Positions 1,950-23,141 of a DNA stretch of 23,694 bases are shown here, piece after piece; the first letter of the stretch is position 1, and every line of letters starts with the position of its first letter. The position numbers and the translations under genes are program-made. Under the pieces are notes generated by a model, which ran no database searches, had not been told where the DNA came from, and saw nothing but the letters and a program-made list of their open reading frames with translations. The stretch covers positions 1 to 23,694 of the IMG/VR virus record IMGVR_UViG_3300005859_000281. The stretch is one strand, 5' to 3'.

Positions 1950-2033
1950 AAACAGCTGTTTGAGACCTCCTTTCTTTCCTCCCCACCGCCCGCCCAACCT
2001 CGCTTTCCTAACTGGTTAGACAAAACTTAAATA
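1950..2033 (+). promoter_or_regulatory. Two-box promoter module copy 3
   Basis: AAACAGCTGTTT 1950-1961, CTAACTGGTTAG 2008-2019, TTAAATA 2027-2033. Confidence 0.75.
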
Positions 2034-4549: not shown

Positions 4550-4572
4550 CCTTTTTGCGACAAGTTAAACCC

Positions 4573-8252: not shown

Positions 8253-8269
8253 AATGTAGGACAGAATAA

Positions 8270-9014
8270 GAAGGAGTTAAGGGCGGAAAGCCTCGCCATG
8301 GGATGGACAGCCCCTTATAGAAAGTTTCGATACCGCTTTGCTTTCTTTTTCTTTATAATTCTTTCATCTAAATAAATATTCTCATAGAAATGGCGAACTA
8401 TAATATAATCTCCTTCTTGTATCTTTTCCTTATATACTATATAAATTGATTTACTATGCTCTTCTGCTCTTATCTTATAAATTCTATAATTCATTAGGAA
8501 GAGAATAGGATTAAAGAATAAAATTTTGTTATTCTTAAATAATCCAAATATGAAGAATAAAACTATAATAAACACAATCAGTCCGATTAATGTGGCTGGA
8601 AAAACAGATAGTAACGCTAACACGTAAGTAGTCATTGTTATATTAGCGTAGTTTACACTCAGGTCTTCTATTCCAGTCACGTGATAAGTTCTCGGGCTTT
8701 CTTTGTCTTCCTCTGTCGTTATCAAGTAATAATAACCGTAATTCGAAATTATTAAAAGAGCTGATAGTATCATGTAGGGTATTAAAAGTAGGGGTATGCT
8801 AAAGGAATATATTCTAATATAAAATATAAAGAAATATTTAGAATAGGTAATCATTAGTATTATAAATACTAATGTATATTCGCTCAAGAACAATCGCAGT
8901 GAATTAAATATATGTGTACTCATGGACTGACTTACATTTATATTGTAATACAAACTAAATAAAACTTGTTTTATTGAGGGAACCAACGCCCTCCCTGGGC
9001 GAGAAGAAAGTCGG
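8270..9014 (+). mobile_element. Non-autonomous IS200/IS605-derived element carrying a passenger gene
   Basis: Left-end-like GAAGGAGTTAAGGGCGGAAAGCCTCGCC..GGATGGACAGCCCC (8270-8314) and right-end-like GGGAACCAACGCCC..GGGCGAGAAGAAAGTCGG (8978-9014) enclose one ORF; ends recognised from recalled Sulfolobales IS605-family termini. Confidence 0.6.
8315..8923 (-). CDS. Multi-pass membrane protein, KwaA (Kiwa)-like
   Basis: About 4 TM helices; TTYVLALL...FFNPILFLMNYRIYKI resembles the KwaA TY..P / NP.L...GY..Y pattern; very AT-rich; likely start ATG 8923. Confidence 0.55.
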   Translation of the reverse strand: MSTHIFNSLRLFLSEYTLVFIILMITYSKYFFIFYIRIYSFSIPLLLIPYMILSALLIISNYGYYYLITTEEDKESPRTYHVTGIEDLSVNYANITMTTYVLALLSVFPATLIGLIVFIIVLFFIFGLFKNNKILFFNPILFLMNYRIYKIRAEEHSKSIYIVYKEKIQEGDYIIVRHFYENIYLDERIIKKKKAKRYRNFL

Positions 9015-9096
9015 TTAGGTGCTCTTTAACAAACAATAAAGGAGAAATTAAACCACAAACAGAACCCTTATTAAATATTAAAACATATGTTTTTGC

Positions 9097-10455
9097 ATGG
9101 AACGTATCGAAGTAGAACTCGATGATCCTGAAATTTCAAAATATATTCAAAAATTAGGTGCAAATAACGTATATCTTGTTGGTGGCACTGTCAGGGACAT
9201 CCTGACTGGCAAGAAGCCTAAGGATTTAGATTTTGTAGTCACCGATTTCGATAAAGCGTTAAAGTTGGCAGAAGAGATGAACTTACCTATTCATGAAGAC
9301 GGCATAGATTTCGGAGTCCTTAGGATAGGAGATAAGTATGATTTTGCTTCATTGAGGAAGGAGCGATACGACACTGTTAGTAAACCTACCGTTGAGCTCG
9401 GTGCTTCTTTAGAAGAAGATGCGAGAAGGAGGGATTTTACAATTAATGACCTCTATGGCAAGATAGTAGGTATTCACGGAAATAAATTGGTAATGGAGAT
9501 CCTTGATTTCAACAACGGTTTGGAGGATCTACGTAATCATGTGTTAAGGTTTGTAGGAAACCCACAGGAGAGAATAGACGAGGATCCGCTTAGGATACTA
9601 AGGGGAATAAGGTTTAACCTTTACGGCTATAAAATGTCCCCAGACCAACTAGAAATAATGAAGAAGAACGTTGATAAGCTGGGTGGATTACCTATAGAGA
9701 GGATCAGTGATGAGATACTAAAAATACTAAAGGTTAACCCTGCGGAGGGGTTTAAACTACTCGACGAGTTCGGTCTATTAAAATATCTCTATGAAGAACA
9801 TTACGATGCATTAAAGAATACCTATCATGATAATAGGGGTGCACACCACGGCGAGAATGTTATAGAGCACACATATGAGACGTTAAAGAGGCTTAGACGC
9901 CCAGATATTGAAACGTTATTAGCAGTAATTTATCACGATGTAGGCAAACCTTATACTAGGAGCGAAAAAAACGGGAAGATAATGTTCATAGGTCATGCTA
10001 ACGAGAGTGCAGAAATTGCAAAGGAATTAATGAAGAACCTAAAGTTACCTAACAACCTGATAAAGGACGTTTCTAACCTAATAGAAATGCATATGGACTT
10101 TAATTTAGCACAGAATAACGAGAAGAACCAGGCACAATTAATTACTAAGTTAATGTCATTGTATTCTTGGAACCCTGAGAAAGCAAGAGAGATATATAAT
10201 AAACTAATAGAGCTATCTCACGCGGATACTGCAAGCGAGAATATACTTAACATGTCCGACAAGATAAAAGAGCCGATTGTAACTGGAGAAGAAATAATGA
10301 ATACTTTTGGTGTGAGCGGAAGCATATTGAAGCATTTGAAGGAGAGGGCATATACTCTACAACTCCAAGGATATGATAAAGGCGAGATACTGAAGACGTT
10401 GAAGGGTGATAACAAATTAAACGAGTTTAAGAAGGTGTTAGAAAATTGGAGCTGA
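9097..10455 (+). CDS. cca: Class II (bacterial-type) CCA tRNA nucleotidyltransferase / poly(A) polymerase family protein with HD domain
   Basis: GGTVRD..KDLDF (DxD), RKERY loop, RRDFTIN, EDPLRILRGIRF, ERISDE; HD domain EHT..YHDVGKP..GHA..HM..AD. Confidence 0.9.
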   Translation: MERIEVELDDPEISKYIQKLGANNVYLVGGTVRDILTGKKPKDLDFVVTDFDKALKLAEEMNLPIHEDGIDFGVLRIGDKYDFASLRKERYDTVSKPTVELGASLEEDARRRDFTINDLYGKIVGIHGNKLVMEILDFNNGLEDLRNHVLRFVGNPQERIDEDPLRILRGIRFNLYGYKMSPDQLEIMKKNVDKLGGLPIERISDEILKILKVNPAEGFKLLDEFGLLKYLYEEHYDALKNTYHDNRGAHHGENVIEHTYETLKRLRRPDIETLLAVIYHDVGKPYTRSEKNGKIMFIGHANESAEIAKELMKNLKLPNNLIKDVSNLIEMHMDFNLAQNNEKNQAQLITKLMSLYSWNPEKAREIYNKLIELSHADTASENILNMSDKIKEPIVTGEEIMNTFGVSGSILKHLKERAYTLQLQGYDKGEILKTLKGDNKLNEFKKVLENWS

Positions 10456-10511
10456 AAATCCTTAATAGGAAAGGTACCTCATTATTGAGGTTTCATGAAT
10501 TTGCACTCGAC

Positions 10512-11153
10512 CTATTGAGGGGTATTAGGGAGGGATGTTAGGGAGAGGAAATGAGGTATTCCAAAAGGGATACAAATATTACGTATTCCGTTGCATTCGC
10601 CTATATATGCATTTATCTCTTTATTCATATCGCAGTTCTCTTTTGAAAGCTTATGGAACACTCTTCCGTTTCCGTCTAAAATCCTGTATTTATTCCCCTC
10701 TTTAACCACAATTATCCGATCCTCTGCTAGCTTGCCCCTTCTCTTACCGTAATTCTCTCCATCTTCACAAAGTTTCCTCTTTATTTCTTCATTTTTCACG
10801 ATCTCTTCAATATTCTTGTATTTATACCCTGGAAAACCTTGTATTTCAGTTGAGATTATAAGATCCTTTAACTTAACGCTACCTTCTTCCCACGTACAAG
10901 ATTCGGCAGTTATTTCTTTTGCTATGAACTTCCTCTTAAACATTAAACTAAGCCCGTAAAATAAATCATAAATCTCCTTACAGTCCTCTTCTATTCCTTT
11001 CTTATGCTCACGGCACTTTTTGACTAGCCCATCTATATTAATTATATCAGGGGTTTTATCGCGAGTTAACGATGCTAATTCGTGCAATATATAACTTTTT
11101 ACAACCTCTAATCGCGACTCTTGAGTTAAATGCTCAGGATATTTTGTTATCAT
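10512..11153 (-). CDS. ParB/Sulfiredoxin-like domain protein
   Basis: IIVVKEGNKYRILDGNGRV resembles the ParB/Srx I.V....Y.I.DGxHR signature (H replaced by G). Confidence 0.55.
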   Translation of the reverse strand: MITKYPEHLTQESRLEVVKSYILHELASLTRDKTPDIINIDGLVKKCREHKKGIEEDCKEIYDLFYGLSLMFKRKFIAKEITAESCTWEEGSVKLKDLIISTEIQGFPGYKYKNIEEIVKNEEIKRKLCEDGENYGKRRGKLAEDRIIVVKEGNKYRILDGNGRVFHKLSKENCDMNKEINAYIGECNGIRNICIPFGIPHFLSLTSLPNTPQ

Positions 11154-11310
11154 ACATTACCTTTTTGATGTTTTTGTTTAAAAAGAAAAGGTGTTTATCC
11201 ATCAACAATAAACCTCAAACAGCTGTTTATGAGAGCGGAATAGGATCTGACTTGCTTGAGCTTGCCTTACCAACAGTCAGCTTTATTTGCCGTAGTTCTA
11301 AGGGTATAAT

Positions 11311-11652
11311 ATGATTACCCAAAAAGAAATGGTTTCGGCAATTTATAATTGTGTTAAGAAACGTGAAAAACATCTTATTGAGGAAAAGTCTTTCTTAATT
11401 TCCCTCTCTGTAGGAATCCCTGCAGACGACTTTTATGAAGTCGATGAACATCTTACTTATCGCGGTTTGGCAAACGATTACGTTGCTTACTGCGAAAATT
11501 ATTTGCCTATATTAGATAAATACGACAAGAAAACGATTTTAGAGGCTTCCCTGTACATGTTTAACCTAATAAGGAGAGGAGTGCGTGGTAAATTAAACGA
11601 AAAAGCCTCAAAATTGCTCTCGGAACTTAATCTATTCCAAGGCTATTCTTAA
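11311..11652 (+). CDS. Hypothetical protein (113 aa)
   Basis: ORF with TTTATTT ~30 nt upstream and a T-rich tract downstream. Confidence 0.75.
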   Translation: MITQKEMVSAIYNCVKKREKHLIEEKSFLISLSVGIPADDFYEVDEHLTYRGLANDYVAYCENYLPILDKYDKKTILEASLYMFNLIRRGVRGKLNEKASKLLSELNLFQGYS

Positions 11653-11710
11653 TTTCTTTAATAACCTCTTCTTTCTTTCTTCAATTTACTGTTCCCAATG
11701 ACGAAACGAA

Positions 11711-11878
11711 CGGCAAGCCTCGTCTCAGTCCTTAACGAGGTTTTAATTTAGTACTGACGAAACTAGAAGAAGGAGAGAAAAAGAGGGAAAAAGTACGAAA
11801 TGCTATATAGGAGAAAAAGTACGAAATAAGGGAAAAAAGATAACGGTAATTCGAACTGAACTGCGGGGAGGAGGTTAG
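11711..11878 (+). mobile_element. Degenerate IS200/IS605-end remnant
   Basis: CGGCAAGCCTCGTC..CAGTCCTTA (left-end-like, 11711-11734) and GCGGGGAGGAGGTTAG (right-end-like, 11863-11878). Confidence 0.45.
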
Positions 11879-12529
11879 AATCACCGAGAAGATTACAGTA
11901 TTCTTTGCGTATATAACTATAGTATTATCGTATATGGACGATTTTACTTCTCCACCATCATGTACCACTATTATGCTTCCATTTATTGGGTAGTATAATG
12001 TCTGTTCTATCAGTGCTGTTCCATTTATTGTGATTTTTCCTTTTTGCACTGTTACATTCCCGTTGTATAGTATCTGCCAACCGTATTCCGATACCCCATA
12101 CGATGAGTTGTATATTACAGTAAAATAAGCATTTATGATCGGATATATCGTCCCTGCAGGGGCGAATCCGCTTATAGATAAGACAGCAGTTTGAGTGTTA
12201 TATAAATATAATGTAATTACATAGGGAGAGTCTTGCGGAATAGCAACAGTAGGATCTGGTGCTGTAACGTTTACTATAACATATTCGTGCGGTTTTATGA
12301 TTATTATGGTTGGGTACCAACGATGGCTATTAATTATAGGCACCAATACATATGTTTTATTGGTAGGGTTTTGTATGCATATCGTTATCACGTTGTACTT
12401 ATTTATTTCTCCTACGTCGTAAAAATCCAATACCTTTGCATGCAATTGCGGGTGATAGAAAAAAATAGAAAACGTGAAAAGAGATGGTATTATAACTGCT
12501 AACATTAGTACGATTTCAAACTTTTCCAT
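11732..12529 (-). CDS. Membrane-anchored/secreted beta-rich probable glycoprotein
   Basis: N-terminal TM; several N-x-S/T sequons (NKT, NVT, NSS, NGT, NGS); likely start ATG 12529 with GGTG SD. Confidence 0.75.
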   Translation of the reverse strand: MEKFEIVLMLAVIIPSLFTFSIFFYHPQLHAKVLDFYDVGEINKYNVITICIQNPTNKTYVLVPIINSHRWYPTIIIIKPHEYVIVNVTAPDPTVAIPQDSPYVITLYLYNTQTAVLSISGFAPAGTIYPIINAYFTVIYNSSYGVSEYGWQILYNGNVTVQKGKITINGTALIEQTLYYPINGSIIVVHDGGEVKSSIYDNTIVIYAKNTVIFSVILTSSPQFSSNYRYLFSLISYFFSYIAFRTFSLFFSPSSSFVSTKLKPR

Positions 12530-13565
12530 CTTGCACCATCCATTCAGCATACTGTAACGCAAAATAAAATGTAAAATACCCCAAATCTCTAAAAGAGAAT
12601 ATCCATATTAACGCGGGAAGACCCCAAGCTAATTCTTTCTTATTATTATATAATAGGATTAATGCGAAAAGAGGCATCTCAAGCACGGTGTACACGAACG
12701 AGGGTATAGGTAACCCGAATGCGGTAAGAAATGAAAACGAAATGCCCTGATGTGCAACCGGTTGTGTAATAGTTATAACGGACGCAAGATATTGCTTTGA
12801 AATGAAGGGTATTGATGAGAGCAGTAACGGTAACGTGAATTCTGTTATCTTTCTAAGTTTTTGCTTTTCAAATTTAATTAGAAGAATAGCTATCAATATT
12901 GCAAACTGCTTTACGTCTGCAGAGATTCCCAGGAGCAGGTATCTGAATCTCTCATTAAATATTGCAAGAAACGCAATAGAATATGCGAAAAGGTTCAGTT
13001 CTTGCCCTGTCGCAAAATCGTACGAAAGTGCAGGAAATAGGAAAAAAGATGCGATGAAAACGTTTTCGCGTCTTTTGATGAAGGAATAGGTAAAAGCTAA
13101 AACAGCTGTTATTACGTCTACTGTTTCAAGGTTATGCAGAATTGCAACACTGATGAACGATAATGGAGGGTAAATATAGACGGACGGTAAAAATGAGTTT
13201 GACGTAGTGCCGGTCACAACGTTATACGGAACGTGATATATGGAAAACGCTTTAGCCATTGAGTAAAGGTACGGATTTTTTCCGTCTAGGAATAAGTGTG
13301 ACGCATATAATATTATTGCTTCTTCATCCGTCAGGATAGGTAATCCCGTCATGATGTTCACTACAGCTGTAATAGTTGCAATAGCAAAAGCCGAAACAAT
13401 GAGTATTCTTTGCCTTACGAAGATAGAGAGCATACCTAGAGCAACAACGAGAAATGCCGTAGGCAATAAATACGGTTTTCCGTCACCTAAAAACGCTGTT
13501 CCTATGCTGATTAAACCTAGCCCTGCCAAAAACCATGATATATTATCTTTCAATTTTTGTTCCAT
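12516..13565 (-). CDS. GT-C fold integral membrane glycosyltransferase (GT87/DUF2029-like)
   Basis: About 10 TM segments; TDE acidic motif, GKNPY, YIYPPL, VKQF. Confidence 0.65.
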   Translation of the reverse strand: MEQKLKDNISWFLAGLGLISIGTAFLGDGKPYLLPTAFLVVALGMLSIFVRQRILIVSAFAIATITAVVNIMTGLPILTDEEAIILYASHLFLDGKNPYLYSMAKAFSIYHVPYNVVTGTTSNSFLPSVYIYPPLSFISVAILHNLETVDVITAVLAFTYSFIKRRENVFIASFFLFPALSYDFATGQELNLFAYSIAFLAIFNERFRYLLLGISADVKQFAILIAILLIKFEKQKLRKITEFTLPLLLSSIPFISKQYLASVITITQPVAHQGISFSFLTAFGLPIPSFVYTVLEMPLFALILLYNNKKELAWGLPALIWIFSFRDLGYFTFYFALQYAEWMVQDGKV

Positions 13566-13577
13566 AACCGACTCCTG

Positions 13578-14237
13578 CTACAATCTGTCGGTACTTATCG
13601 GAGTAATACCTAACGTCTGTGCTATTTCGAGTGGAGATAACATTTCCACTCTCATTTTCGATGTGCTTACTCCTGCAACTTCCATGATACTCCTTTCAAA
13701 CGCTAACAAAAGTAACACTACTAGTTTATGTGCATCATTAAGCTTAGCTATTATATCATCATAATTTGCATCGATTGATATCAAACTATGAAGCTCTGAA
13801 AACTTTTCAGACAATTCGTCAATGGAAAGACTTGAAAACCTATCAGTCAAAATCGATAATAAAATCTGGAAATTATCATCTACGTTAAATGGAGTGCCGT
13901 AGAACTGGAGAGACCCGCTCTTAAGATCTTTTGTTAAAATCAAGACGTAATTGTTTAGGATTTCTTGCACAGTTGTTATTTTGATGGCTTCTTTTTGGGT
14001 CACCTGCCTTGTCGGTATGATAGCTTTTTCCCTGATTGCTTGCCTGACCAGGTTTGGGTCAACTTTTACAATGTTTCTCTTCCCAAGTGGCGATAATTGA
14101 GGTTGTTGTTGGGTTTGTTGTATTTGTTGAAACAGTTGTGGTGGTGCAGGCGTTGTCGTGCTTGGTATTTCATAAGTGGGTTCTTGTTGCTGTTGTTGTT
14201 TTTTAGTATTGGAGTTATTGGAGTTATTTAGGCTCAT
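13578..14237 (-). CDS. Hypothetical protein with N/Q/P-rich N-terminus
   Basis: 219-aa ORF divergent from moxR; TATA 14269-14262. Confidence 0.85.
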   Translation of the reverse strand: MSLNNSNNSNTKKQQQQQEPTYEIPSTTTPAPPQLFQQIQQTQQQPQLSPLGKRNIVKVDPNLVRQAIREKAIIPTRQVTQKEAIKITTVQEILNNYVLILTKDLKSGSLQFYGTPFNVDDNFQILLSILTDRFSSLSIDELSEKFSELHSLISIDANYDDIIAKLNDAHKLVVLLLLAFERSIMEVAGVSTSKMRVEMLSPLEIAQTLGITPISTDRL

Positions 14238-14261
14238 ACTACTTTCTTGTCCCGGAAGACG

Positions 14262-14319
14262 TTTAAAAAGTGGGTTTTGACGTTCAAACAGGTGTTTGAG
14301 GAAACTTTTTAAGTTTCCT
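14262..14319. promoter_or_regulatory. Divergent promoter with TCAAACAGGTGTTTGA palindrome and an inverted repeat around the TATA box
   Basis: Palindrome 14284-14299; AGGAAACTT-TTT-AAGTTTCCT 14299-14319. Confidence 0.7.
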
Positions 14320-14335
14320 ACACCAGATGTTTTTT

Positions 14336-16099: not shown

Positions 16100-16106
16100 G
16101 TATCTT

Positions 16107-18467
16107 ATGCAAAGCTTCTTTCATGATAACGAAGATGATGAGAGACAACTGACTGAACTAACAAACACTATTTTTGAAACAGTGGTAAATGAACTTGGAC
16201 ATTTGTCTGATTATCTTTCACTTACACCAGACGTTATGGATAGTTTAAGAGATACTGTATATAAACTTGTCAAGATAGCATCGCAACAAAACAAACTTCT
16301 TTTGCAATTCCCAGCAGTCCTCGCTTATTTCGTTTATAATTTTTTAAAAAATATCGATTTAGATAGGATAAAAGACATAAACGAAAAATTAGACAATATT
16401 CAGCGTCTGATACAACGTAAAAACTTGCAGGGTTTATCATTCAGCACTATCAAACAGCTGTTACAACAAGAATTGCAGGAGAAAAAATTCAGACGCAACA
16501 GACCCAATAAAGCAGAAAAACAAAAAGAAGAGCAGAAACAAAGCGGAAAAGAAGAAAAACAACAAGAACAGCAGAAGCAAGGTGGAAAAAGATCCAACAA
16601 AGTAGAAAAACAACAACAAGAAGGAGAAAAACAAGAAGAGGGAAAAGAAGGGCAGGAAAGTGAAAGCGAAGAGAGCCAAGGACAACAAGGACAGGAATCG
16701 GGAGAAGAAAGCCAGGAGGGTAACGAGCAGGAAAGCGGTGAGGAACAGGGGCAACAAGAAGGTGGAGAAGGAAACCAAGGAGAAGAAACACAACAAGAAG
16801 GACAAGAAGGAGGACAGCAAAGTGAAAGCGAAGGCAACCAAGAGGAGGGAGAAGAAGGGGAGTCACAAGAAGGTGGAGAAGGAGAACAGGGAAACGGAGA
16901 AGAGGGCGAGGAACGGGGAAACGAAAACCAAGGGGAACACGGACAGGAATCAGGAGGAGAAGAAGGGCAACAAAGCAAAAACGAAGGAGAACAGCAAAGT
17001 GGAGAAGAAGGAAACGAAGGAGAACGTGGCAATGCCCAAGAAGGACAGGAATCAGAAGGTGAAAGCGGGAATGAAGAAAGTCAAAGTGGAGAAGAAGGTG
17101 GAGAACAACAACAAGGGCAGGAATCAGAAGTGGAAAGTGAAAACGAAGGAAACGAAGGTCAAAATAGTGAGGGACAAGAAGGTCAAAACGGTGAACAAGG
17201 AGGAGGACAGGGAAACGAAAACGAAGAGAATCAAAGCGGAGAAGAAAGCGGAGAAGGTCAAAATGGCGAACAAGGAGAAGGAAGCGGAATGAACCAGGAG
17301 GGTAACGAGCAGGAAAATGAGGGACAAAGCGGAAATGAAGGGAATGAGGGAGAACAACAAGGAGAAGGGAGTCAAAGTGGAGAAGAAGGTGAGGGACAGG
17401 AATCAGGAGAAGGGCAGGAAAGTGAAAGCGAGGGGAGCCAAAATGGGGAAGGAGAAACCCAAGAAGGTGAAGGAGGAGGACAGCAAAGTGGAGAAGAAGG
17501 CAACCAAGGTCAAAGTGGAGAAGAAGGAGGACAGGAATCAGGAGGAGAAGAAGGGCAACAAAGTGAAAACGAAGATATTATAGAAGACCTCGAAAATAAC
17601 ATAGATGAAGAATCAAAGATTTTAGACGGATTGCAAGAAAGCCTTCAAGAGTCCTTAACAGCTTTATCTATTGGGAAAGGCTCAGGAGGAGGAGTATTAA
17701 AGGATATCAATCCTAGAGTTTTAGAATTATTAGAGAGTGCTAACAGGCTTTTGGCTTTGGCTAACCAAGTTGATTTACAGTACGCTAACAGAGGCGTTAA
17801 AGATCAGGGAGGGGTGATGAGGGGGATAACAACTGGAAATAATGTCAAACATATGTTTAAGAGTCAACTAGTTTTACCGGATGAGATTTTCCTCGAACGG
17901 TATACTAACAGAGCCTTACTGCAAAGGGCGGTAGAAAATGAGGGCGTTGGGGACTTATATTTCATGATAGATAAAAGCGGGTCTATGGGGAATTTTATGC
18001 CGAACGGGTATACTGCGTTTGAAAATGTTTCGGCTGTAGCCTTAGCTTCTGCTATGGAGGCAGAAAAGAACAGTAAGAAGGTGTTTGTACAATACTTCGA
18101 TTCTTCGTCAACCGAGCCTATAGATGTTAACAACGTTTTCGAAGTAGCTCAGACCCAACCCGGAGGAGGAACGGACATGATGGTTGCATTACAAGACTTC
18201 ATGGAATATTATAATAACTATCCCGGGTTAAAGGACGTAAGACAGATCTTCATACTATCTGATTTTGAGACGAACTATGATACTACGCTTTATTATTTCA
18301 AGAACTTTGCAAGAAATAATGGCTTAGTAGTTACGTGCATACATGTATATAATGATGAAGTGCCTGCTCGTATGCAAACCATAATAGACGAAATCTGTGA
18401 TGAATATTATAAATTTAATAATTATGATGCAGGCGAATTATTTTCAGCCGTGTATTCAAAGATTTAG
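16107..18467 (+). CDS. VWA-domain co-chaperone with long E/G/Q-rich linker (ATV p892-like)
   Basis: MIDAS DKSGS...GGGT...ILSD at the C-terminus; directly downstream of the MoxR ATPase. Confidence 0.9.
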   Translation: MQSFFHDNEDDERQLTELTNTIFETVVNELGHLSDYLSLTPDVMDSLRDTVYKLVKIASQQNKLLLQFPAVLAYFVYNFLKNIDLDRIKDINEKLDNIQRLIQRKNLQGLSFSTIKQLLQQELQEKKFRRNRPNKAEKQKEEQKQSGKEEKQQEQQKQGGKRSNKVEKQQQEGEKQEEGKEGQESESEESQGQQGQESGEESQEGNEQESGEEQGQQEGGEGNQGEETQQEGQEGGQQSESEGNQEEGEEGESQEGGEGEQGNGEEGEERGNENQGEHGQESGGEEGQQSKNEGEQQSGEEGNEGERGNAQEGQESEGESGNEESQSGEEGGEQQQGQESEVESENEGNEGQNSEGQEGQNGEQGGGQGNENEENQSGEESGEGQNGEQGEGSGMNQEGNEQENEGQSGNEGNEGEQQGEGSQSGEEGEGQESGEGQESESEGSQNGEGETQEGEGGGQQSGEEGNQGQSGEEGGQESGGEEGQQSENEDIIEDLENNIDEESKILDGLQESLQESLTALSIGKGSGGGVLKDINPRVLELLESANRLLALANQVDLQYANRGVKDQGGVMRGITTGNNVKHMFKSQLVLPDEIFLERYTNRALLQRAVENEGVGDLYFMIDKSGSMGNFMPNGYTAFENVSAVALASAMEAEKNSKKVFVQYFDSSSTEPIDVNNVFEVAQTQPGGGTDMMVALQDFMEYYNNYPGLKDVRQIFILSDFETNYDTTLYYFKNFARNNGLVVTCIHVYNDEVPARMQTIIDEICDEYYKFNNYDAGELFSAVYSKI
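16500..17575 (+). repeat. Intragenic purine-rich imperfect repeats encoding GQESGEE/GEQQ units
   Basis: For example a 35-bp exact repeat at 16941-16975 and 17529-17563. Confidence 0.85.
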
Positions 18468-18501
18468 CTCTTTTTTAACCTCATGACTCCAAGTTAGAAT
18501 T

Positions 18502-18861
18502 ATGAAATATTATGAAGTTAGTACGAGGGTGTATTTACCGGAGCCTATAGCACAATATTTCGTAAACTGTTTTTTCCTAAAATTGCCGAACAAGTATTAC
18601 GAGGTTAGTAATGTAATAACATATAGAGATGAGGAGAACAAGGTAAGCGTCAACGTGCCGGCAGACCAAGTCAGAGGCATTACAGACGCATTATTGGCAT
18701 CTGCGTTAGATTTTTATATGGCTCTCGCCGTTTGCACCGACAACAGTCTTTCGCTATACCGCATGATAAAAAAGGCGAGAGCGAAAGTAAAGGAAACGCT
18801 AAAAATAGATAATATAAACCTCGACCCTGAGTTTCCAATTTGTTTAAAGGGTGGTAAATAA
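18502..18861 (+). CDS. Hypothetical protein (119 aa)
   Basis: ORF with TAATG overlap to the next gene. Confidence 0.8.
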   Translation: MKYYEVSTRVYLPEPIAQYFVNCFFLKLPNKYYEVSNVITYRDEENKVSVNVPADQVRGITDALLASALDFYMALAVCTDNSLSLYRMIKKARAKVKETLKIDNINLDPEFPICLKGGK

Positions 18862-19304
18862 TGCAACCTGAACTTACACCGTCTGATATGATTGCATTAA
18901 TATCCGAAGCTTTAGGGGAAAAAGATGAGGATGGCGACCCGGAGACCTTGATAAAACTATTACTACGCGATGATTTGCCTAAACAAACGAGGTTAATTAT
19001 TCTTAACTGTATCGTGAAAAACTGCGGGTTGCAGAAAAGTTTATCCATATTAGATCCCTTCGTTCCAATAGACGACATACAATCATTAGAGGCATTGAAA
19101 ATCGAAGGGACGAAAATACTTGTATGCATTAATTACACAAAAGTTAGAGATTGTTATTTGATAATTTTAGCGAATAGACAGTTCCATATAAAAAGAGTAA
19201 CTAATCCTAACGAATTATTACAGAAGATGAAGCAACAACAAGGAGGAGGAAAGAGACAAAACAAGGATCTTATTTTAAGTAAGCTCGGCGGTGAGGATCT
19301 CTGA
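18861..19304 (+). CDS. Hypothetical protein (147 aa)
   Basis: ORF with SD GGTGG. Confidence 0.8.
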   Translation: MQPELTPSDMIALISEALGEKDEDGDPETLIKLLLRDDLPKQTRLIILNCIVKNCGLQKSLSILDPFVPIDDIQSLEALKIEGTKILVCINYTKVRDCYLIILANRQFHIKRVTNPNELLQKMKQQQGGGKRQNKDLILSKLGGEDL

Positions 19305-19333
19305 CGGCTTCCCGCACTAAAGGGCGAGTCTTC
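19301..19333 (-). mobile_element. IS200/IS605 right-end remnant associated with a 15-bp direct repeat
   Basis: Reverse complement GAAGACTCGCCCTTTAGTGCGGGAAGCCGTCAG; GGTGAGGATCTCTGA at 19290-19304 and 19343-19357. Confidence 0.6.
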
Positions 19334-19353
19334 ATAAGACGGGGTGAGGATCT

Positions 19354-20865
19354 CTGATATGCGAAGTCGTTGCCAGTTCGTTCAAGCCACGCGACGGTGA
19401 CGTTGTGAACGCTGACATATCAAACATACGTTTTGCATACCCACCAAACTGTATCTTCTCGTCTCAGTACACTCAATTCATTCATGTTGATCATCCTTTG
19501 CCGAAGATAAGCCGACTAAGGTTTAAGAGAGAGAATGGGGAAGAAGTGAAGGATGACAATTACGTAGTAATAGATATTGGAGACGACTTCTTAGTTTTAC
19601 CAATAGAAGTTTGGAATAAACTGAAGGAGCTTATATCGACTTATTTGAGTGAAGGAACTTTGCACGGAGGCATCCTATTGTACGGCGTCCCCGGCACCGG
19701 TAAATCATACATTGCTACTAAATTACTTACAAGGATTCTGGGGTTGAAAGCAATTGTTAAGCAACCTACCGATTTCTTGACGAAATACGTCGGTGAACCT
19801 TATCAATTACTAAACGATTTCATAAATAAACAACTATTTTCCAACAAACCTTCCGTCATAGTTTTTGACGAGGGAGAAAGGTTTTTACTAAAAAGAGGTG
19901 GAGGCGGTGAAGCTGAAAAATTGGTAGAGGACAATATGAAGAATATATTATTAGAAAAATTGCAGGAATTTGCGGATTCGCAATATCCTTCGATTCTTGC
20001 ATTAACTACTAACGCTTCAATAAACGATATGGACGACGCAATGCTGAGGAGGTTTCCCTGGAAAATTTATTTTCCTCCTTATTCGCATACCGTTTACGAG
20101 TACATAGCCAGGAAGATAACTACACAAAGAACTTTCAAAATTGAGGACAAGGAATATGATGTACAGAAACTATCGTTTTATGCATCTGCTACAGGCATTT
20201 CTGTAGCTGAGTTCAGGACTATAATACAGACTGGGACTACCTCTTTTCTCAGGTCAAAAAGTAACTTCCCGAGGAGACTTGTGCCATTCGAATTACAAGA
20301 TAAGGAAAGTATTTTAGATATAACGAAATTGCCCCAACTCAGGCGTTTTGATATCAAAAATAAGAACGTAAAAATGTTATGCGAAGGAGCATTATACACC
20401 ATGACTGCAGTAGTAACAAGCTATTTTCTTACGAGTGAGAATAGACCCGTTTACCTTATAGATTTACAAGAGTCCACTTCCTTGAGGTATGGAAGCGACG
20501 ATATCATAACGTTACTCAAGCAGGAAAACAAACCGGTCGGTATAATTCACATGCATGGCAACCTCAACATCAACAAACAGCTGTTAATAGAGCGTCTACT
20601 GGAAGAGGATAACGTTAGTTTTGTGGTAATAACGAGTTTTGATAGTTCATTATTACAAGTACAAACATTGAAGCTTCTACCTAGGATTGATATAACACAA
20701 TTACCTGCAACTGACACAGACATTTTGAAAAAAATATTGTACACGGTAAACACATTTTACGGGCTGAAGTTGGACATGCAAAAAACGATGAATGAACTAC
20801 ATAGAGAAATGGATTTTAGAAAAGCTATGGATGTGTTGGAGAAAATGATCGCCATGACAATCTAA
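19354..20865 (+). CDS. AAA+ ATPase, CDC48/FtsH-like clade (ATV p529-like)
   Basis: Walker A GVPGTGKS, pore loop KYVGE, Walker B VIVFDE, TTN, DDAMLRRF; start either CTG 19354 (good SD) or GTG 19405. Confidence 0.9.
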   Translation: MICEVVASSFKPRDGDVVNADISNIRFAYPPNCIFSSQYTQFIHVDHPLPKISRLRFKRENGEEVKDDNYVVIDIGDDFLVLPIEVWNKLKELISTYLSEGTLHGGILLYGVPGTGKSYIATKLLTRILGLKAIVKQPTDFLTKYVGEPYQLLNDFINKQLFSNKPSVIVFDEGERFLLKRGGGGEAEKLVEDNMKNILLEKLQEFADSQYPSILALTTNASINDMDDAMLRRFPWKIYFPPYSHTVYEYIARKITTQRTFKIEDKEYDVQKLSFYASATGISVAEFRTIIQTGTTSFLRSKSNFPRRLVPFELQDKESILDITKLPQLRRFDIKNKNVKMLCEGALYTMTAVVTSYFLTSENRPVYLIDLQESTSLRYGSDDIITLLKQENKPVGIIHMHGNLNINKQLLIERLLEEDNVSFVVITSFDSSLLQVQTLKLLPRIDITQLPATDTDILKKILYTVNTFYGLKLDMQKTMNELHREMDFRKAMDVLEKMIAMTI

Positions 20866-20949
20866 AAGGGGGATCGAGGTTGCTCTGAAAAGCAGGAAAT
20901 CCTCACCGCGAGGTGGGGATGCCCCGTCCGTAAGGACGGGATAGTTCAT
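20866..20949 (+). mobile_element. IS200/IS605 remnant with right-end hairpins
   Basis: Hairpins ATCCTCACC-GCGA-GGTGGGGAT and CCCGTCC-GTAA-GGACGGG followed by TAGTTCA. Confidence 0.65.
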
Positions 20950-21896
20950 GCATTACCCAATACCTCAGGGAAAGTAGGTATACCGTCCTTCACGTATTTT
21001 ATCATCATATCCGCTACATCCCACCACATGTATTTAGGTCTTATAGGTACCTCACTAACGTCGCAAGTCATGCCTTCGGCGTCGAGGGGTCTATATAAAT
21101 CCGGGTCTATCTCATAAGTACCACCTACTTTCTCCATTACGTACTTCAAAAAGTCTTCCACACTCGCTATAACACCAGTGCAGAGGATATACCTTTTCGG
21201 CTCCTCTCCTTCCATAACTTTATTGAATATCTTCACATATTCTCCCGCGTATCCCCAATCTTTTTCAGCCTTGATATTACCTAATTTCACATGCTCCTTT
21301 TCCACTAAGTTCTTAACTATTTTCATGGTCACAAACTCTTCGCCCCTCAACTCGCTCTCGTGATTAAACGTTACAAAATCATAAACCTTAAGCCCCCATA
21401 CTTTACGGTAATAAGTAGCGATATACATTAATGAAACTTTACTTATTGCGTAAGGTGTAACGGGAGCCAGCGGTGTAGAAAGGGTTTGAGGGCGTTCCAA
21501 CGGGTGACCGAATACCTCACTCGAAGCAGGTAAAAATACTTTAGTCTCAGGCGTATGTTTCCTAACAGCCTCCAATATAGCATAAGCCGAAAGCTCGTTC
21601 ACCTGAGCCGTATAGATGGGGTTATTATAGCTATACGGAACGAAGCTCATAGCACCATAATGATATATCATGTCGGGCTTTAGCTCACGTACTATGTCGA
21701 AGACGTTTTCATATTCTGTAAGGTCAGCATAGACAAATTTAGGAGATACACCAAGAATTTCAATGACAGTCCGCATCTGGTTAGTCAACCCGTCTGCTCT
21801 ATGCCTGGTTAATACATATAACTCATCTCCCTTCTTTATATGAAGGAAGGTAGAAAGACTTGAGTCCTGACCCGCACCTGTAATTAAAACCTTCAT
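20946..21896 (-). CDS. gmd: GDP-mannose 4,6-dehydratase
   Basis: ITGAGQD, ASSEVFG, YAISK (YxxxK), FNHES.LRGEEFVT.KI, LGN...KDWG, YRP. Confidence 0.9.
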   Translation of the reverse strand: MKVLITGAGQDSSLSTFLHIKKGDELYVLTRHRADGLTNQMRTVIEILGVSPKFVYADLTEYENVFDIVRELKPDMIYHYGAMSFVPYSYNNPIYTAQVNELSAYAILEAVRKHTPETKVFLPASSEVFGHPLERPQTLSTPLAPVTPYAISKVSLMYIATYYRKVWGLKVYDFVTFNHESELRGEEFVTMKIVKNLVEKEHVKLGNIKAEKDWGYAGEYVKIFNKVMEGEEPKRYILCTGVIASVEDFLKYVMEKVGGTYEIDPDLYRPLDAEGMTCDVSEVPIRPKYMWWDVADMMIKYVKDGIPTFPEVLGNA

Positions 21897-21973
21897 AAGA
21901 TCATCTTCATGTAAAGATATATAAGCCTTGAGTTAAGAGTACTCTCTACTCTAGAGTACCCAAAAAATTATAA

Positions 21974-22033
21974 ATTTAGGGGTTCCAAGGGGGCGTAAGA
22001 TTCCGACTGACCAATTCTAGGGGAGGAAGCCAG
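21974..22033 (+). mobile_element. Mini IS200/IS605-derived element (fused left and right ends, ~60 bp)
   Basis: TATAA then ATTTAGGGGTTCCAAGGGGGCGTAAG...GGGGAGGAAGCCAG. Confidence 0.6.
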
Positions 22034-22042
22034 CTAAATAAC

Positions 22043-22063
22043 TTTTTAAACAGCTGTTTGAGA
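22043..22063 (+). promoter_or_regulatory. TATA box overlapped by the AAACAGCTGTTTGAGA palindrome
   Basis: TTTTTAAA 22043-22050, palindrome 22048-22059, ATG 22074. Confidence 0.7.
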
Positions 22064-22073
22064 GGTATATATA

Positions 22074-22538
22074 ATGAGTGAAAATAATCGTAATAAGCGT
22101 CTTTCTTCATTCGAGACGTATGCAGAAGCTATAGCGAAAATACTAAACTTAATATATACACTTGACCAACTTTCGCAATATTATGACCTTAACCAACTCT
22201 CTACACAGTACCTTAACCAGCCATTTACTCCTATTTCACCTAAAAAACTTGTAAATTATTTTGGTGTTCAGTACAACAAAATACCAAGCCTAGTTCAGCA
22301 AACACAATACAATCCTGTGGCATTGGTAACGAAGGCAAATCAAATTGCCCAGCAAATTGAACCAGATGTAATAAATTCCCTTGCGTCAATGTACGGCGTC
22401 GAACCAAGTATAGTTAGATCGTTACAAGTATATTTGCAGTTGGCACAGGTTTTACCAAAGGTAGTGAGTAGCCAGACCGTTCAAGTCACCAATAATCAAC
22501 AATATACTGCGTCGCCCTACGTGATGGAAAACTACTGA
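22074..22538 (+). CDS. Hypothetical Q-rich protein (154 aa)
   Basis: ORF with a clear promoter. Confidence 0.8.
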   Translation: MSENNRNKRLSSFETYAEAIAKILNLIYTLDQLSQYYDLNQLSTQYLNQPFTPISPKKLVNYFGVQYNKIPSLVQQTQYNPVALVTKANQIAQQIEPDVINSLASMYGVEPSIVRSLQVYLQLAQVLPKVVSSQTVQVTNNQQYTASPYVMENY

Positions 22539-22583
22539 ACTAACCTACCTCGAGGCTTTCTGCCCCCTTAACCCCCCAGAAAG
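22535..22583 (-). mobile_element. Mini IS200/IS605-derived element (49 bp)
   Basis: CTGAACTA...GAGGCTTTCTGCCCCCTTAACCCCCCAGAAAG followed by TTAAA; homologous to 23059-23113. Confidence 0.7.
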
Positions 22584-22615
22584 TTAAAAATCGTTATAAT
22601 ATCAAGAATCTATTG

Positions 22616-23062
22616 ATGTCGAGATTCTTGGTGTCAAGATTGCTGAAATTTGCCGTGGTCGGGGGGCTAGGCACGTTCGTGAATGAACTAGTATTTTTAT
22701 CTACTACTAAGCTTTTATCCATATCGATATCATTAGCATTAGCAATAGAGCTTTCAATAATATTTAATTTTATACTAAATGATATTTGGACTTTTAAGGA
22801 TAAAAGAGTAGGAAGTTTTATTAAGAGACTACTTAAATTTCATATGTCGTCAGCTAGTGGAGGAATTATTCAGTATATTGTGGTAATTTCCATTATTGTA
22901 ATCATGTTTCATTTTAGTAATGCTTCGGAAATAGTGGCAATATTGTTTTTTACGTCTTATTTAAAACTTCAGTCTTTAGTACTTGGCATAATCAATTTCA
23001 TAGGAATAATTTCTGGGTTCATCGTAAGATTTATAACAAGTATAAAGTTGGTATGGACGTGA
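22616..23062 (+). CDS. gtrA: GtrA-family protein (putative lipid-linked sugar flippase)
   Basis: KFAVVGGLGTFVN...SIIFNFILNDIWTFKD; four TM helices. Confidence 0.88.
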   Translation: MSRFLVSRLLKFAVVGGLGTFVNELVFLSTTKLLSISISLALAIELSIIFNFILNDIWTFKDKRVGSFIKRLLKFHMSSASGGIIQYIVVISIIVIMFHFSNASEIVAILFFTSYLKLQSLVLGIINFIGIISGFIVRFITSIKLVWT

Positions 23063-23113
23063 ACTACCACGCCCTCACGGAGGGGGACTTTCGCCCCCTC
23101 AACCCCCAGAAAT
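23059..23113 (-). mobile_element. Mini IS200/IS605-derived element (55 bp)
   Basis: GTGAACTACCACGCCCTCACGGAGGGGGACTTTCGCCCCCTCAACCCCCAGAAAT followed by TTAAA. Confidence 0.75.
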
Positions 23114-23141
23114 TTAAACATGTAAAACATATGTTTTTATG

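What the first reader, a model, noticed from the sequence alone, without database searches (positions are those of the whole stretch)
8270..23118. Candidate gene-capture system: IS200/IS605-end mini-elements bracket accessory genes as antisense cassettes
Seen: related GC-rich hairpin elements at 8270-8314, 8978-9014, 11711-11878, 19301-19333, 20866-20949, 21974-22033, 22535-22583 and 23059-23113, with no transposase or TnpB in the window. Three foreign-looking genes are enclosed. The KwaA-like gene lies between a left and a right end, gmd between two plus-oriented remnants, and gtrA between two minus-oriented mini-elements. In all three the cargo is antisense to the element. Known: IS200/IS605 HUH transposases recognise subterminal hairpins, act in trans and insert 3' of a short AT-rich motif without target duplication. 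Inference: the outermost ends act as composite transposons that import host genes into the virus, like an integron or REP system built from minimal IS ends.
Basis: partly seen in the sequence, partly recalled or inferred. Interest (0 to 1): 0.85.

Follow-up and report, generated by a model that had tools for sequence, protein, structure and literature searches.

The report
Decayed transposon-end remnants between virus genes
The GC-rich islands in this Sulfolobus spindle-virus fragment are real, mostly decayed, protein-less leftovers of IS200/IS605 (TnpB-type) insertion sequences that fill the gaps between operons. The evidence indicates they did not carry the three accessory genes in.

Summary
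The window is a Yellowstone-type Sulfolobus monocaudavirus relative, closest to SMV4. All eight listed islands exist. They belong to non-autonomous IS200/IS605 (IS1341/TnpB-type) derivatives: solo right ends (E2, E4), a 180-nt MITE (E3), about 50-nt single-hairpin mini-elements (E1, E6, E7, E8), and the last 80 nt of an omega-RNA-bearing element (E5). Their core matches the right end of the IS annotated in SMV1 and the Rfam families HgcC and sot0042. E7 and E8 sit directly 3' of a TTTAA motif, and E3 sits 3' of TGAC. The window has no tnpA or tnpB. The kwaA, gmd and gtrA identities are confirmed.

The gene-capture reading fails its own tests. gtrA sits at the same locus in four relatives with no flanking elements, and a backbone tree indicates a single gain. 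gmd and kwaA occur at 80-90% identity elsewhere without elements. Relatives lacking the cargo still keep a solo element at the same boundaries. Only E5 still folds significantly.

The best reading is that trans-mobilised, decaying PATE/MITE-like elements saturate the few inter-operon boundaries that tolerate insertions, which are also the boundaries where accessory genes turn over. One point is unexplained. E4 is a clean 53-nt insertion polymorphism with a 15-nt target duplication, which this family should not make.

The parts
8262..8314 (+). E1: a 'B-type' mini-element (GGAGTTAAGGGCGGAAAGCCTCGCC...GACAGCCCC). Its 5' tip and its TTTAC flank were removed by a roughly 450-nt deletion. Its 3' end abuts the kwaA stop codon.
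   Evidence: nhmmer E=0.009. L019 keeps the intact version with its TTTAC flank and a longer upstream ORF. No significant hairpin, z=+0.25.
8315..8986 (-). kwaA-like 4-TM membrane protein gene. The likely start is the ATG at 8923, giving 202 aa. There is no kwaB partner.
   Evidence: PADLOC KwaA at 6e-9 over 25-207. Homologues carry a precomputed PF28043:KwaA label. The homology block to L170 is 8337-8975 only.
8978..9014 (+). E2: a solo right-end (RE) remnant, GGGAACCAACGCCC-TCCCT-GGGCGAGAAGAAAGTCGG, preceded by ATTGA.
   Evidence: nhmmer E=0.23. By eye it shares about 28 of 37 positions with the last 37 nt of the SMV1 IS right end. It is absent from L019 and ATSV at the orthologous spot.
11699..11878 (+). 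E3: a roughly 180-nt MITE/PATE. It consists of TGAC (11699-11702), a left end GAAACGAACGGCAAGCCTCG plus hairpin, an AT-rich interior, and a right end GCGGGGAGGAGGTTAG.
   Evidence: The left end is 87.5% identical over 24 aligned positions to the SMV1 IS left end. Exact pattern hits. nhmmer E=0.007. The interior is shared with L042 at another site, and the right end is shared with SMV1 at the orthologous site. The minus-strand ORF 11732-12562 reads about 45 codons into it.
19290..19357 (-). E4: a 38-nt solo right end (19305-19342) flanked by a perfect 15-nt direct duplication, GGTGAGGATCTCTGA (19290-19304 and 19343-19357). The duplication holds the upstream gene's last codons and stop, and the GGTGAGG box ahead of the AAA ATPase start.
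   Evidence: 12 relatives have the empty site with one copy of the 15-mer. The window and L007 are filled. L169, whose AAA gene is identical, lacks it. nhmmer E=0.007.
20866..20948 (+). E5: the 5'-truncated last 80 nt (two stem-loops) of an omega-RNA-bearing protein-less IS200/IS605 element. Its end ...GGGATAGTTCA overlaps the gmd stop codon.
   Evidence: 96% identical to L166 1313-1387 and L036. The L166 copy aligns end to end with sot0042 at E=0.038. Fold z=-4.1.
20946..21966 (-). gmd (GDP-mannose 4,6-dehydratase family) with its own promoter of about 70 nt. This is the unit shared with other contigs.
   Evidence: PF16363 at 2.6e-61. The homology block to L015-L018 is 20955-21966. Present only in the window, L169 and L167 among 15 relatives.
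21972..22034 (+). E6: a decayed whole B-type mini-element. Its right part, TTCTAGGGGAGGAAGCCAG, is orthologous to the solo elements that relatives carry between the AAA gene and gp154.
   Evidence: Positional alignment with L007, L009, SMV3 and L042. The RE pattern matches with 2 mismatches. No hairpin, z=+1.05. Not recovered by nhmmer.
22539..22588 (-). E7: a B-type mini-element (22539-22583) with TTTAA on its own strand at 22584-22588. Its 3' end abuts the gp154 stop codon.
   Evidence: nhmmer E=0.015. AAGCCTCG on the minus strand. Absent upstream of gtrA in L009 and L010, and partial in L007.
22613..23062 (+). gtrA (GtrA/DPMS transmembrane family).
   Evidence: PF04138 at 1e-18. Present at the same locus in SMV1, L007, L008, L009, L010 and L167. 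The AAA-gene tree indicates a single gain.
23063..23118 (-). E8: a B-type left part fused to an RE-2-type right end (23063-23113), with TTTAA on its own strand at 23114-23118. Its 3' end abuts the gtrA stop codon.
   Evidence: 82% identical to E7 over 28 nt (D17). 92-98% identical copies in L007 and L008. SMV4 and L012 have a positional orthologue without gtrA.
1962..2016 (-).
   Evidence: A GC island at 73%. The resemblance (GGAAAGCGAGG...GGGGAGGAAAG...GGAGGTCTC on the minus strand) was judged by eye only and is not recovered by nhmmer. It lies inside the stretch that aligns with SMV4.

Best explanation
The islands are non-autonomous, mostly decayed derivatives of IS1341-type IS200/IS605 insertion sequences. 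They include solo right ends, single-hairpin mini-elements of 38-55 nt, one 180-nt MITE, and a fragment of an omega-RNA-bearing PATE.

Inferred mechanism. A Y1 (HUH) TnpA made in trans mobilised them as single strands. That TnpA would come from full IS copies in the host chromosome, in pMGB1-like plasmids or in SMV1-like viruses. The elements inserted 3' of TTTAA/TTTAC (B-type) or TGAY (A-type) motifs, which lie in AT-rich promoter regions and at stop codons.

Insertions survive only at the few boundaries between operons, because most genes here overlap. Those boundaries therefore fill up with elements in either orientation, which then decay. The same boundaries are the only places where extra promoter-plus-ORF units (kwaA, gmd, gtrA, and a zinc-finger gene, small ORFs, an IS or a tnpB in relatives) are tolerated. 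Cargo genes therefore end up 'bracketed'.

The cargo genes were gained separately, by recombination with other viruses or plasmids, and not by transposition between the element ends.

Shown here: homology to IS ends, multi-copy dispersal, flank motifs, presence/absence patterns, and decay.
Inferred: trans-mobilisation by TnpA, and tolerance as the reason for co-location.
For: 1. Homology to IS ends. The SMV1 record annotates an IS200/605 and two SMN2 MITEs. Its right end, CCTCGCCCTTTAGGGCGGGGAGGAAGTCAG, matches HgcC (2e-6) and sot0042 (6e-11). The 21-mer core occurs more than 120 times across archaea and bacteria, including 45-nt TGAC/TTGAT-flanked mini-elements in Sulfolobales chromosomes.

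2. The window elements hit a profile built from relatives' elements. E5 and the E3 interior have copies at unrelated sites. SMV1 holds two near-identical 45-nt copies.

3. Flank motifs. TTTAA flanks E7 and E8 and TGAC flanks E3. These agree with the published S. islandicus LE-side motif TTTAA/TTTAT (PMC10640517).

4. Clean filled and empty sites without duplication in relatives: L038 against L042, and SMV4 against L043.

5. Both orientations occur at the same boundary in different relatives.

6. Occupancy is at least as high without cargo. All six cargo-free lineages at AAA|gp154 and 3 of 4 gtrA-less lineages at gp154|TM carry an element. By contrast, about 4 of 6 upstream and 3 of 7 downstream gtrA junctions do.

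7. gtrA was gained once, and its flanks differ among descendants. The positional orthologue of E8 is present in gtrA-less SMV4 and L012.

8. The gmd and kwaA units occur elsewhere with no element.

9. Seven of the eight islands have lost a significant hairpin.

10. PATEs mobilised in trans are described in the literature (PMC10055086; PMC3839810).
Against: E4 carries a perfect 15-nt target duplication, which peel-and-paste insertion should not produce.

For kwaA and gmd, the blocks shared with other genomes stop within about 25 nt of the inner edges of the flanking elements. E5 and E1 are clipped exactly at junctions. Several insertions in this virus group carry duplications of the neighbouring gene end: about 15-21 nt next to gtrA in L009 and SMV1, and 116 nt in ATSV. 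These patterns could mean that the elements take part in the rearrangements themselves.

No transposition event was observed directly, and the cognate TnpA was not tested.
Confidence: 0.68

Rival explanations
1. Recombination hot-spot reading. The mini-elements do not transpose the cargo, but they are the preferred breakpoints. Hairpin-induced fork stalling, TnpA nicking, or TnpB/omega-RNA cleavage next to right ends would create breaks. At these breaks, promoter-plus-ORF units are swapped among co-infecting viruses and plasmids. Direct repeats of the element then allow cassettes to be deleted or re-integrated.
For: All six cargo junctions in the window carry an element, and the shared blocks of gmd and kwaA end at the elements' inner edges.

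E5 is truncated exactly at the AAA stop codon, and E1 exactly at a 450-nt deletion end.

In SMV4 a small ORF sits between the first 5 nt and the rest of the mini-element seen intact in L007 and L009.

gtrA is flanked by direct E7/E8 copies, while SMV4 and L012 keep one copy.

Four boundaries each hold several alternative cargos across relatives.
Against: Occupancy is as high or higher at cargo-free boundaries.

gtrA has element-free junctions in four relatives.

The single copy in SMV4 looks E8-like along its whole length, not like an E7/E8 hybrid.

The left edge of the 4.8-kb block (7067/7068) has no element.

Co-location is expected from shared tolerance alone, because the elements themselves create most of the non-coding gaps.
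Confidence: 0.2
2. Pairs of ends act as composite IS200/IS605 transposons that import host genes as antisense cassettes.
For: In the window, the flanking elements of each cargo gene share one orientation and the cargo is antisense. TnpA acts in trans according to the literature (PMC10055086).
Against: Neither flank pair is a left end plus a right end. Both members are whole or right-end-type remnants, and most have lost their hairpins.

No unit recurs elsewhere.

The empty sites keep a solo element.

gtrA was gained once and its flanks vary.

The antisense rule breaks in SMV1 and L008. Three concordant cases have a chance probability of about 1 in 8.
Confidence: 0.04
3. Exapted regulatory hairpins. 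The islands are kept because they act as 3'-end stabilisers or terminators, or supply stop codons and spacing between convergent or tandem genes. This would make them analogous to bacterial REP sequences.
For: The 3' ends of E1, E5, E7 and E8 abut or overlap the stop codon of a gene. B-type elements in SMV1 and L008 supply the TAA stop of gp154. The E4 duplication keeps both the upstream stop codon and the downstream GGTGAGG box.
Against: Orientation flips between relatives. Sequences decay, and only one of the eight islands still folds significantly. Close relatives do without them (L009, L010, L042, L169).
Confidence: 0.08

Closest known systems
PATEs (palindrome-associated transposable elements), the protein-less derivatives of IS200/IS605 described in Haloquadratum and Geobacillus stearothermophilus (PMC3119063; PMC10055086)
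   Same: No coding capacity. Ends homologous to those of a co-occurring IS. Some carry an omega-RNA (the parent of E5 in L166). Presumed mobilisation in trans. No target duplication at the clean sites in relatives.
   Different: Most copies here are far shorter (38-55 nt, a single hairpin or a solo right end) and decayed. They sit in a virus genome, and one (E4) has a 15-nt duplication.
SMN1/SMN2 'Sulfolobus miniature non-inverted repeat' elements and the IS200/IS605 element annotated in SMV1 and pMGB1 (PMC3839810)
   Same: The same virus group and host order. The SMV1 IS ends are the closest full-length relatives of the window's elements. The authors already proposed mobilisation by the IS200 transposase.
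   Different: The window's elements show no sequence similarity to SMN2 itself. They derive from the IS ends and from a different omega-RNA-bearing element.
HgcC / sotRNA (sot0042), the 3' sense-overlapping RNA of IS1341-type tnpB, now called omega-RNA (PMC4615843; Rfam RF00062, RF02656)
   Same: The conserved core hairpin plus GGAGGAAGTCAG of E2, E4 and the relatives' mini-elements is the 3' end of this RNA. E5 equals its last two stem-loops.
   Different: The window copies lack the remaining roughly 100 nt of scaffold. The whole window gave no Rfam hit at E<=1, so a functional guide RNA is unlikely.
REP/BIME sequences with RAYT transposases
   Same: Short intergenic palindromic units derived from the IS200/IS605 world, often found just after stop codons.
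   Different: No RAYT-like gene was seen, copy number is low, and the sequences are heterogeneous and decaying.
Integron gene cassettes (attC)
   Same: Single promoter/ORF units are flanked by imperfect hairpin repeats at a hot spot where several alternative cassettes occur.
   Different: There is no integron integrase or attI, no conserved attC-like structure, cassettes occur without the repeats, and the repeats occur without cassettes.

Membership tests
Non-autonomous IS200/IS605 derivative (PATE/MITE/solo end) | Ends homologous to the left or right end of an autonomous IS200/IS605 element | tested here: met
   The E3 left end is 87.5% identical over 24 aligned positions to the SMV1 IS left end. 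Profile hits for E1, E3, E4 and E7, with E2 borderline. The relatives' elements are up to 26 nt identical to the IS right end. The right end matches HgcC and sot0042.
Non-autonomous IS200/IS605 derivative (PATE/MITE/solo end) | Subterminal imperfect hairpins recognisable by TnpA | tested here: inconclusive
   The hairpin is strong in E5 (z=-4.1) and intact in relatives' copies (L007 E4, the SMV1 and SMV3 mini-elements). In E1, E2, E3, E4, E6, E7 and E8 of the window it is not better than shuffles.
Non-autonomous IS200/IS605 derivative (PATE/MITE/solo end) | Insertion 3' of a short conserved motif (TAM) without target duplication | tested here: inconclusive
   Met for E7 and E8 (TTTAA), for E3 (TGAC), and for clean filled/empty pairs in relatives (motif as in PMC10640517). 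Not met for E4, which has a perfect 15-nt duplication and no such motif.
Non-autonomous IS200/IS605 derivative (PATE/MITE/solo end) | Dispersed multiple copies at unrelated sites | tested here: met
   E5 copies in L166, L036 and L089. The E3 interior in L042. Two 45-nt copies in SMV1. Mini-elements in Sulfolobales chromosomes.
Non-autonomous IS200/IS605 derivative (PATE/MITE/solo end) | Mobilisation by a cognate TnpA supplied in trans | not testable with these tools
   There is no tnpA in the window. A tnpA-tnpB IS exists in SMV1. Activity would need a biochemical or in vivo assay.
Composite / cargo-carrying IS200/IS605 transposon | One left end and one right end in the same orientation at the outer borders, with intact hairpins | tested here: not met
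   E1, E6, E7 and E8 are whole mini-elements, E2 is a solo right end, and E5 is a right-end fragment. No cargo has a left-end/right-end pair, and the hairpins are decayed.
Composite / cargo-carrying IS200/IS605 transposon | The whole unit recurs at other sites, or is precisely absent from empty sites | tested here: not met
   gmd and kwaA occur elsewhere without elements. Relatives keep solo elements where the cargo is absent. gtrA occurs without elements in L009 and L010.
Integron-like cassette platform | Dedicated tyrosine integrase with an attI next to the cassette array, and conserved attC structure | tested here: not met
   No integrase domain was found among the scanned ORFs around the cassettes. 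The SSV-type integrase of relatives lies elsewhere. The flanking repeats have no conserved structure.
Kiwa defence system (KwaA + KwaB) | kwaA adjacent to kwaB | tested here: not met
   KwaA profiles are hit at 6e-9. The neighbours are E1 with a truncated structural-gene copy on one side and a CCA-adding enzyme on the other. The 351-aa ORF overlapping kwaA in L170 gave no PADLOC hit.

The most novel reading that the evidence does not exclude
The mini-elements are the actual breakpoints of gene turnover. Breaks made at or beside them, by TnpA nicking, TnpB/omega-RNA cleavage or hairpin stalling, let promoter-plus-ORF units be exchanged among co-infecting large spindle viruses and plasmids. Variable-length duplications of the neighbouring gene end (15 nt at E4, about 15-21 nt beside gtrA, 116 nt in ATSV) would be the repair scar. 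That would make an IS200/IS605-derived hot-spot system that works like an integron without an integrase.
Probability: 0.12. Interest if true: 0.7.

Novelty: new member of a known kind. Interest (0 to 1): 0.3.

Why it matters
If the main reading holds, this is ordinary mobile-element litter. It is useful mainly for annotation, because the islands should not be called genes, att sites or regulatory RNAs. It also shows how densely 40-55-nt single-hairpin IS200/IS605 derivatives can populate the inter-operon boundaries of archaeal viruses, sometimes supplying stop codons or C-terminal tails.

It would matter more if the hot-spot reading were right. That would link TnpA/TnpB-family elements to modular gene exchange in archaeal viruses. 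The E4 polymorphism between near-identical strains offers a concrete and testable case of very recent gain or precise loss.

Tried and rejected
- tRNA fragments or att sites: no tRNA or tmRNA, and no Rfam hit in the window at E<=1.
- Similarity to the SMN2 MITE of SMV1: none beyond 8-9-mers.
- CRISPR repeat remnants in the window: the CTATAGAAGTGCGGG repeat seen in L008 and SMV1 is absent.
- A fuzzy-regex scan for the right-end core timed out and was replaced by nhmmer profiles.
- Looking for gmd in the viral collection found only the window itself and a 32%-identity hit. Contexts came instead from the protein database.
- Searching for the kwaA unit in the viral collection gave only one relative.
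- The L008 array region has no match in the phage collection.
- The KwaB search was negative.
- Deletion of gtrA by E7 x E8 recombination, giving the single copy in SMV4, was considered. The SMV4 copy looks E8-like throughout rather than hybrid, so it was not adopted.
- Reading E4 in the plus orientation, to place TGAC at its left, was considered. It was rejected because the minus strand matches the IS right end over 26 nt in the L007 copy.

Full report
**What the window is.** Megablast places the 23.7-kb window among the Sulfolobus monocaudaviruses (Bicaudaviridae-like large spindle viruses). SMV4 covers 59% at 88% identity, and SMV3 and SMV1 cover less. Acidianus tailed spindle virus matches only the CCA-adding enzyme gene. 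The window is the IMG/VR contig 3300005859_000281.

Synteny mapping against SMV4, SMV3 and SMV1 shows a colinear backbone interrupted at a few places:
- A 4.8-kb block, 7068-11874, holds a truncated structural-gene copy, kwaA, the CCA enzyme and small ORFs.
- gmd lies at 20866-22036.
- gtrA lies at 22589-23059.

Eighteen further relatives were fetched from the viral collection. Three near-identical or related assemblies came from the protein-context index.

**Are the elements there?** A 30-nt GC scan finds islands at all eight listed places, against a 38% GC background. I collected clean elements from relatives, aligned them and built nhmmer profiles. Against the window alone, the profile hits E3-left, E4, E1 and E7 at E=0.007-0.015 and E2 at 0.23.

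The other three islands are tied in by other evidence:
- E5 is not found by that profile. It is 96% identical to the 3' 75 nt of a roughly 310-nt GC-rich, protein-less element in another viral contig (L166), and to a copy in L036.
- E8 resembles E7 and has 92-98% identical copies in L007 and L008.
- E6's right part is the positional orthologue of solo elements in relatives.

Only E5 folds significantly better than shuffled sequence (z=-4.1). The rest range from z=+1.05 to -1.6. So the hairpin description applies to the family, not to most copies in the window.

**What they are.** The SMV1 record annotates an IS200/IS605 element with tnpA and tnpB, plus two SMN2 MITEs (described in PMC3839810). 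The IS right end, CCTCGCCCTTTAGGGCGGGGAGGAAGTCAG, matches the Rfam families sot0042 and HgcC. These are the 3' sense-overlapping RNA of IS1341-type tnpB, now called omega-RNA (PMC4615843).

The 21-nt hairpin core occurs more than 120 times in genomes of archaea and bacteria. In Sulfolobales and other Thermoproteota chromosomes, many copies are 40-45-nt units lying directly after TGAC, TTGAT or TTAC.

Several forms occur in the window and its relatives:
- A-type: TGAY | AAATGAACGACAAGCCTCGCCC-loop-GGGCGGGGAGGAGGTCAG. There are two near-identical copies in SMV1 and one in SMV3. E3 is a 180-nt version with an AT-rich interior.
- B-type: TTTAA/TTTAC | about 9 nt, GGGGGTTAAGGGGGCG-AAAGCCTCG.... This covers E1, E6, E7 and E8.
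- Solo right ends: E2 and E4.
- A second right-end type ending GGGGTAGTTCA: E5 and the 3' half of E8.

The L166 parent of E5 aligns end to end with sot0042 (E=0.038), and E5 corresponds to its last two stem-loops. E7 and E8 have TTTAA on their own strand directly 5' of the element. This is the LE-side motif (TAM) reported for S. islandicus IS200/IS605 (PMC10640517).

The window has no tnpA or tnpB.

**Cargo identities.** ORF 8315-8986(-) matches seven PADLOC KwaA profiles, the best at 6e-9 over nearly full length. Its homologues carry a precomputed PF28043:KwaA label. gmd and gtrA are clear Pfam matches.

**Test of gene capture: gtrA.** Junction sequences show several states.
- L009 and L010 have gtrA with no element on either side.
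- L042 is fully empty, with neither gtrA nor an element.
- SMV4 and L012 have one minus-oriented element and no gtrA.
- SMV3 has a plus-oriented A-type element and no gtrA.
- SMV1 and L008 have a plus-oriented B-type element upstream of gtrA.
- L007 is like the window.

An AAA-ATPase gene tree places all gtrA carriers in one clade with 100/99 support. SMV2, L042, SMV3, SMV4 and L012, which lack gtrA, are basal. That indicates one gain followed by variable element occupancy. The positional orthologue of E8 exists in gtrA-less SMV4 and L012, so E8 appears to predate gtrA at this boundary.

**Test of gene capture: gmd.** Only the window, L169 and L167 carry gmd. Relatives have a solo mini-element or remnant at that boundary: L007, L008, L009, L010, SMV3 and L042. 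Others have different cargo: a small ORF in SMV4 and L012, and a zinc-finger gene in SMV1.

gmd homologues at 82-87% protein identity lie on other metagenomic contigs. The shared block there is only the gene plus about 70 nt of promoter (window 20955-21966). No family element lies within 5 kb. The first hit from a source with an NCBI record is at 37% identity, so a recent import from a sequenced host is not indicated.

**Test of gene capture: kwaA.** The relative L019/L030 has the same block order with E1 but no E2. A 90%-identical kwaA sits in a host- or plasmid-like context (L170), overlapping a 351-aa ORF. No element is present there, and the shared block is window 8337-8975.

**Elements next to core genes.** All six cargo-free lineages have an element or remnant at AAA|gp154, and 3 of 4 gtrA-less lineages have one at gp154|TM. 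The vWA|gp119 boundary carries elements, in either orientation, in SMV1, L010/L030, L042 and L037. E4 lies between two core genes whose stop and start normally overlap. Occupancy at gtrA junctions across lineages is about 4 of 6 upstream and 3 of 7 downstream. So elements are not enriched at cargo junctions.

In the window, 9 of the 14 intergenic gaps of 40 nt or more contain an element (counting the tentative island at 1962-2016), largely because the elements create the gaps.

**Verdict on the mechanism.** The composite-transposon model fails on four counts:
- No cargo has a left-end/right-end pair.
- The hairpins have decayed.
- No unit recurs elsewhere.
- The empty sites are not the predicted ones.

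The antisense geometry is true in the window but breaks in SMV1 and L008. It is explained simply. TTTAA-like motifs occur on either strand of AT-rich promoters. An element inserted from a promoter-side motif points its right end at the stop codon of the upstream gene.

I commit to the reading of trans-mobilised, decaying PATE/MITE-like elements that saturate the insertion-tolerant inter-operon boundaries, which are the same places where accessory genes turn over (confidence about 0.68).

**What keeps the hot-spot rival alive (about 0.2).**
- The blocks shared with other genomes stop within about 25 nt of the inner edges of the elements.
- E5 and E1 are clipped exactly at junctions.
- In SMV4 a small ORF sits inside a mini-element.
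- Several insertions in this group carry duplications of the neighbouring gene end.

**The unexplained item: E4.** It is a 38-nt solo right end flanked by a perfect 15-nt duplication, GGTGAGGATCTCTGA. Twelve relatives have the empty site with one copy. L169, whose AAA gene is identical to the window's, also lacks the 53 nt. L167 and the more distant L007 carry it. This points to a very recent precise loss in L169, by TnpA excision or by slippage between the repeats.

The duplication preserves both the upstream stop codon and the GGTGAGG box in front of the AAA ATPase start, so selection for it is understandable. How it arose is not explained, because IS200/IS605 insertion should not duplicate the target.

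**Novelty.** MITE/PATE derivatives of IS200/IS605 in Sulfolobus viruses and plasmids are already on record (PMC3839810). These are new members, notable mainly for their very small size and density. Interest is modest.

Noticed in passing
L008 4466-6760 (IMGVR_UViG_3300005861_000260), between the gp154 homologue and gtrA: A 2.4-kb insert holds a 508-aa TnpB (Cas12f1-like_TNB, OrfB_IS605), a 59-aa RHH protein and a four-repeat CRISPR array with 64-66-nt spacing. The repeat, GCCACAGCTCTATAGAAGTGCGGG, differs by 2 nt from a repeat that forms arrays of up to 16 copies in the same metagenomes. Spacer 1 matches the gp154 3' end plus the E7-type element of window-like viruses (33 nt at 91% to window 22527-22558). 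This looks like a virus-borne mini-CRISPR array of the kind in PMC6858448, here aimed at this hypervariable junction.
   Followed up: partly
L183 (metagenome CRISPR array) against SMV1 L003 775-805 and 14821-14851: One spacer of a host-type array with the GCTGCAGCTCTATAGAAGTGCGGG repeat matches the end of the SMV1 SMN2 MITE at 30 of 31 positions. So the mobile elements carried by these viruses are themselves CRISPR targets.
   Followed up: no
window 19290-19357; L169; L007: The E4 mini-element comes with a perfect 15-nt target duplication and is missing from a strain with an identical AAA gene. This is atypical for IS200/IS605.
   Followed up: yes
window 8315-8986 (-); L170 133-1771: The virus carries a solo kwaA, a membrane component of the Kiwa defence system, with no kwaB. 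A 90%-identical kwaA in a host- or plasmid-like contig overlaps a 351-aa ORF that has no PADLOC hit. The last roughly 7 codons of the viral gene differ and lie next to E1.
   Followed up: partly
window 7275-8252 (+): This 325-aa ORF is a truncated, relocated copy of a gene that is 731 aa in SMV4 (gp04, at the other side of that genome). Compared with L019, the window has lost about 450 nt, and the deletion ends at the 5' tip of E1.
   Followed up: partly
L004 (ATSV) 4001-4720: In Acidianus tailed spindle virus, a minus-strand ORF (gp82) plus a minus-oriented right-end remnant is inserted upstream of the CCA-enzyme gene. The insert is flanked by a 116-bp direct duplication of that gene's promoter and start.
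   Followed up: no
L167 (ENA k141_124306, 32.4 kb): A window-like viral segment (vWA to gtrA, 97.8% identity) is joined to cellular genes (aminoacyl-tRNA synthetase-type, ParA, rhomboid and others) directly after the gtrA stop codon, with no E8. It could be a provirus remnant or an assembly chimera. The junction is not at an integrase gene.
   Followed up: partly
window 11732-12562 (-): The ORF homologous to SMV4 gp27 reads about 45 codons into the E3 MITE before reaching a stop codon, so the element supplies a new C-terminal tail.
   Followed up: no
window 1151-1169, 1949-1965, 4503-4520, 9079-9094, 11215-11232, 17845-17862, 22047-22063, 23123-23138: Palindromic boxes AAACAGCTGTTT and AAACATATGTTT recur just upstream of many genes (repeat families D9, D11, D12, D13). 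They are probably promoter or regulator sites. Elements often lie right beside them, and the SMV1 IS is inserted directly after one.
   Followed up: no
window 16500-17600, within ORF 16107-18467: The vWA-domain protein has a roughly 350-residue E/Q/G/S-rich low-complexity stretch with strong purine skew and many imperfect repeats. Assemblies of relatives break there.
   Followed up: no
L015-L017, first 100-290 nt: Three independent contigs that carry gmd end within 300 nt upstream of it, in a region of tandem TCTAGAGT-type repeats. This could be a repeat or strain-variable region, or a genome terminus.
   Followed up: no
By eye it resembles a decayed minus-oriented element, but the profile does not recover it.
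   Followed up: partly
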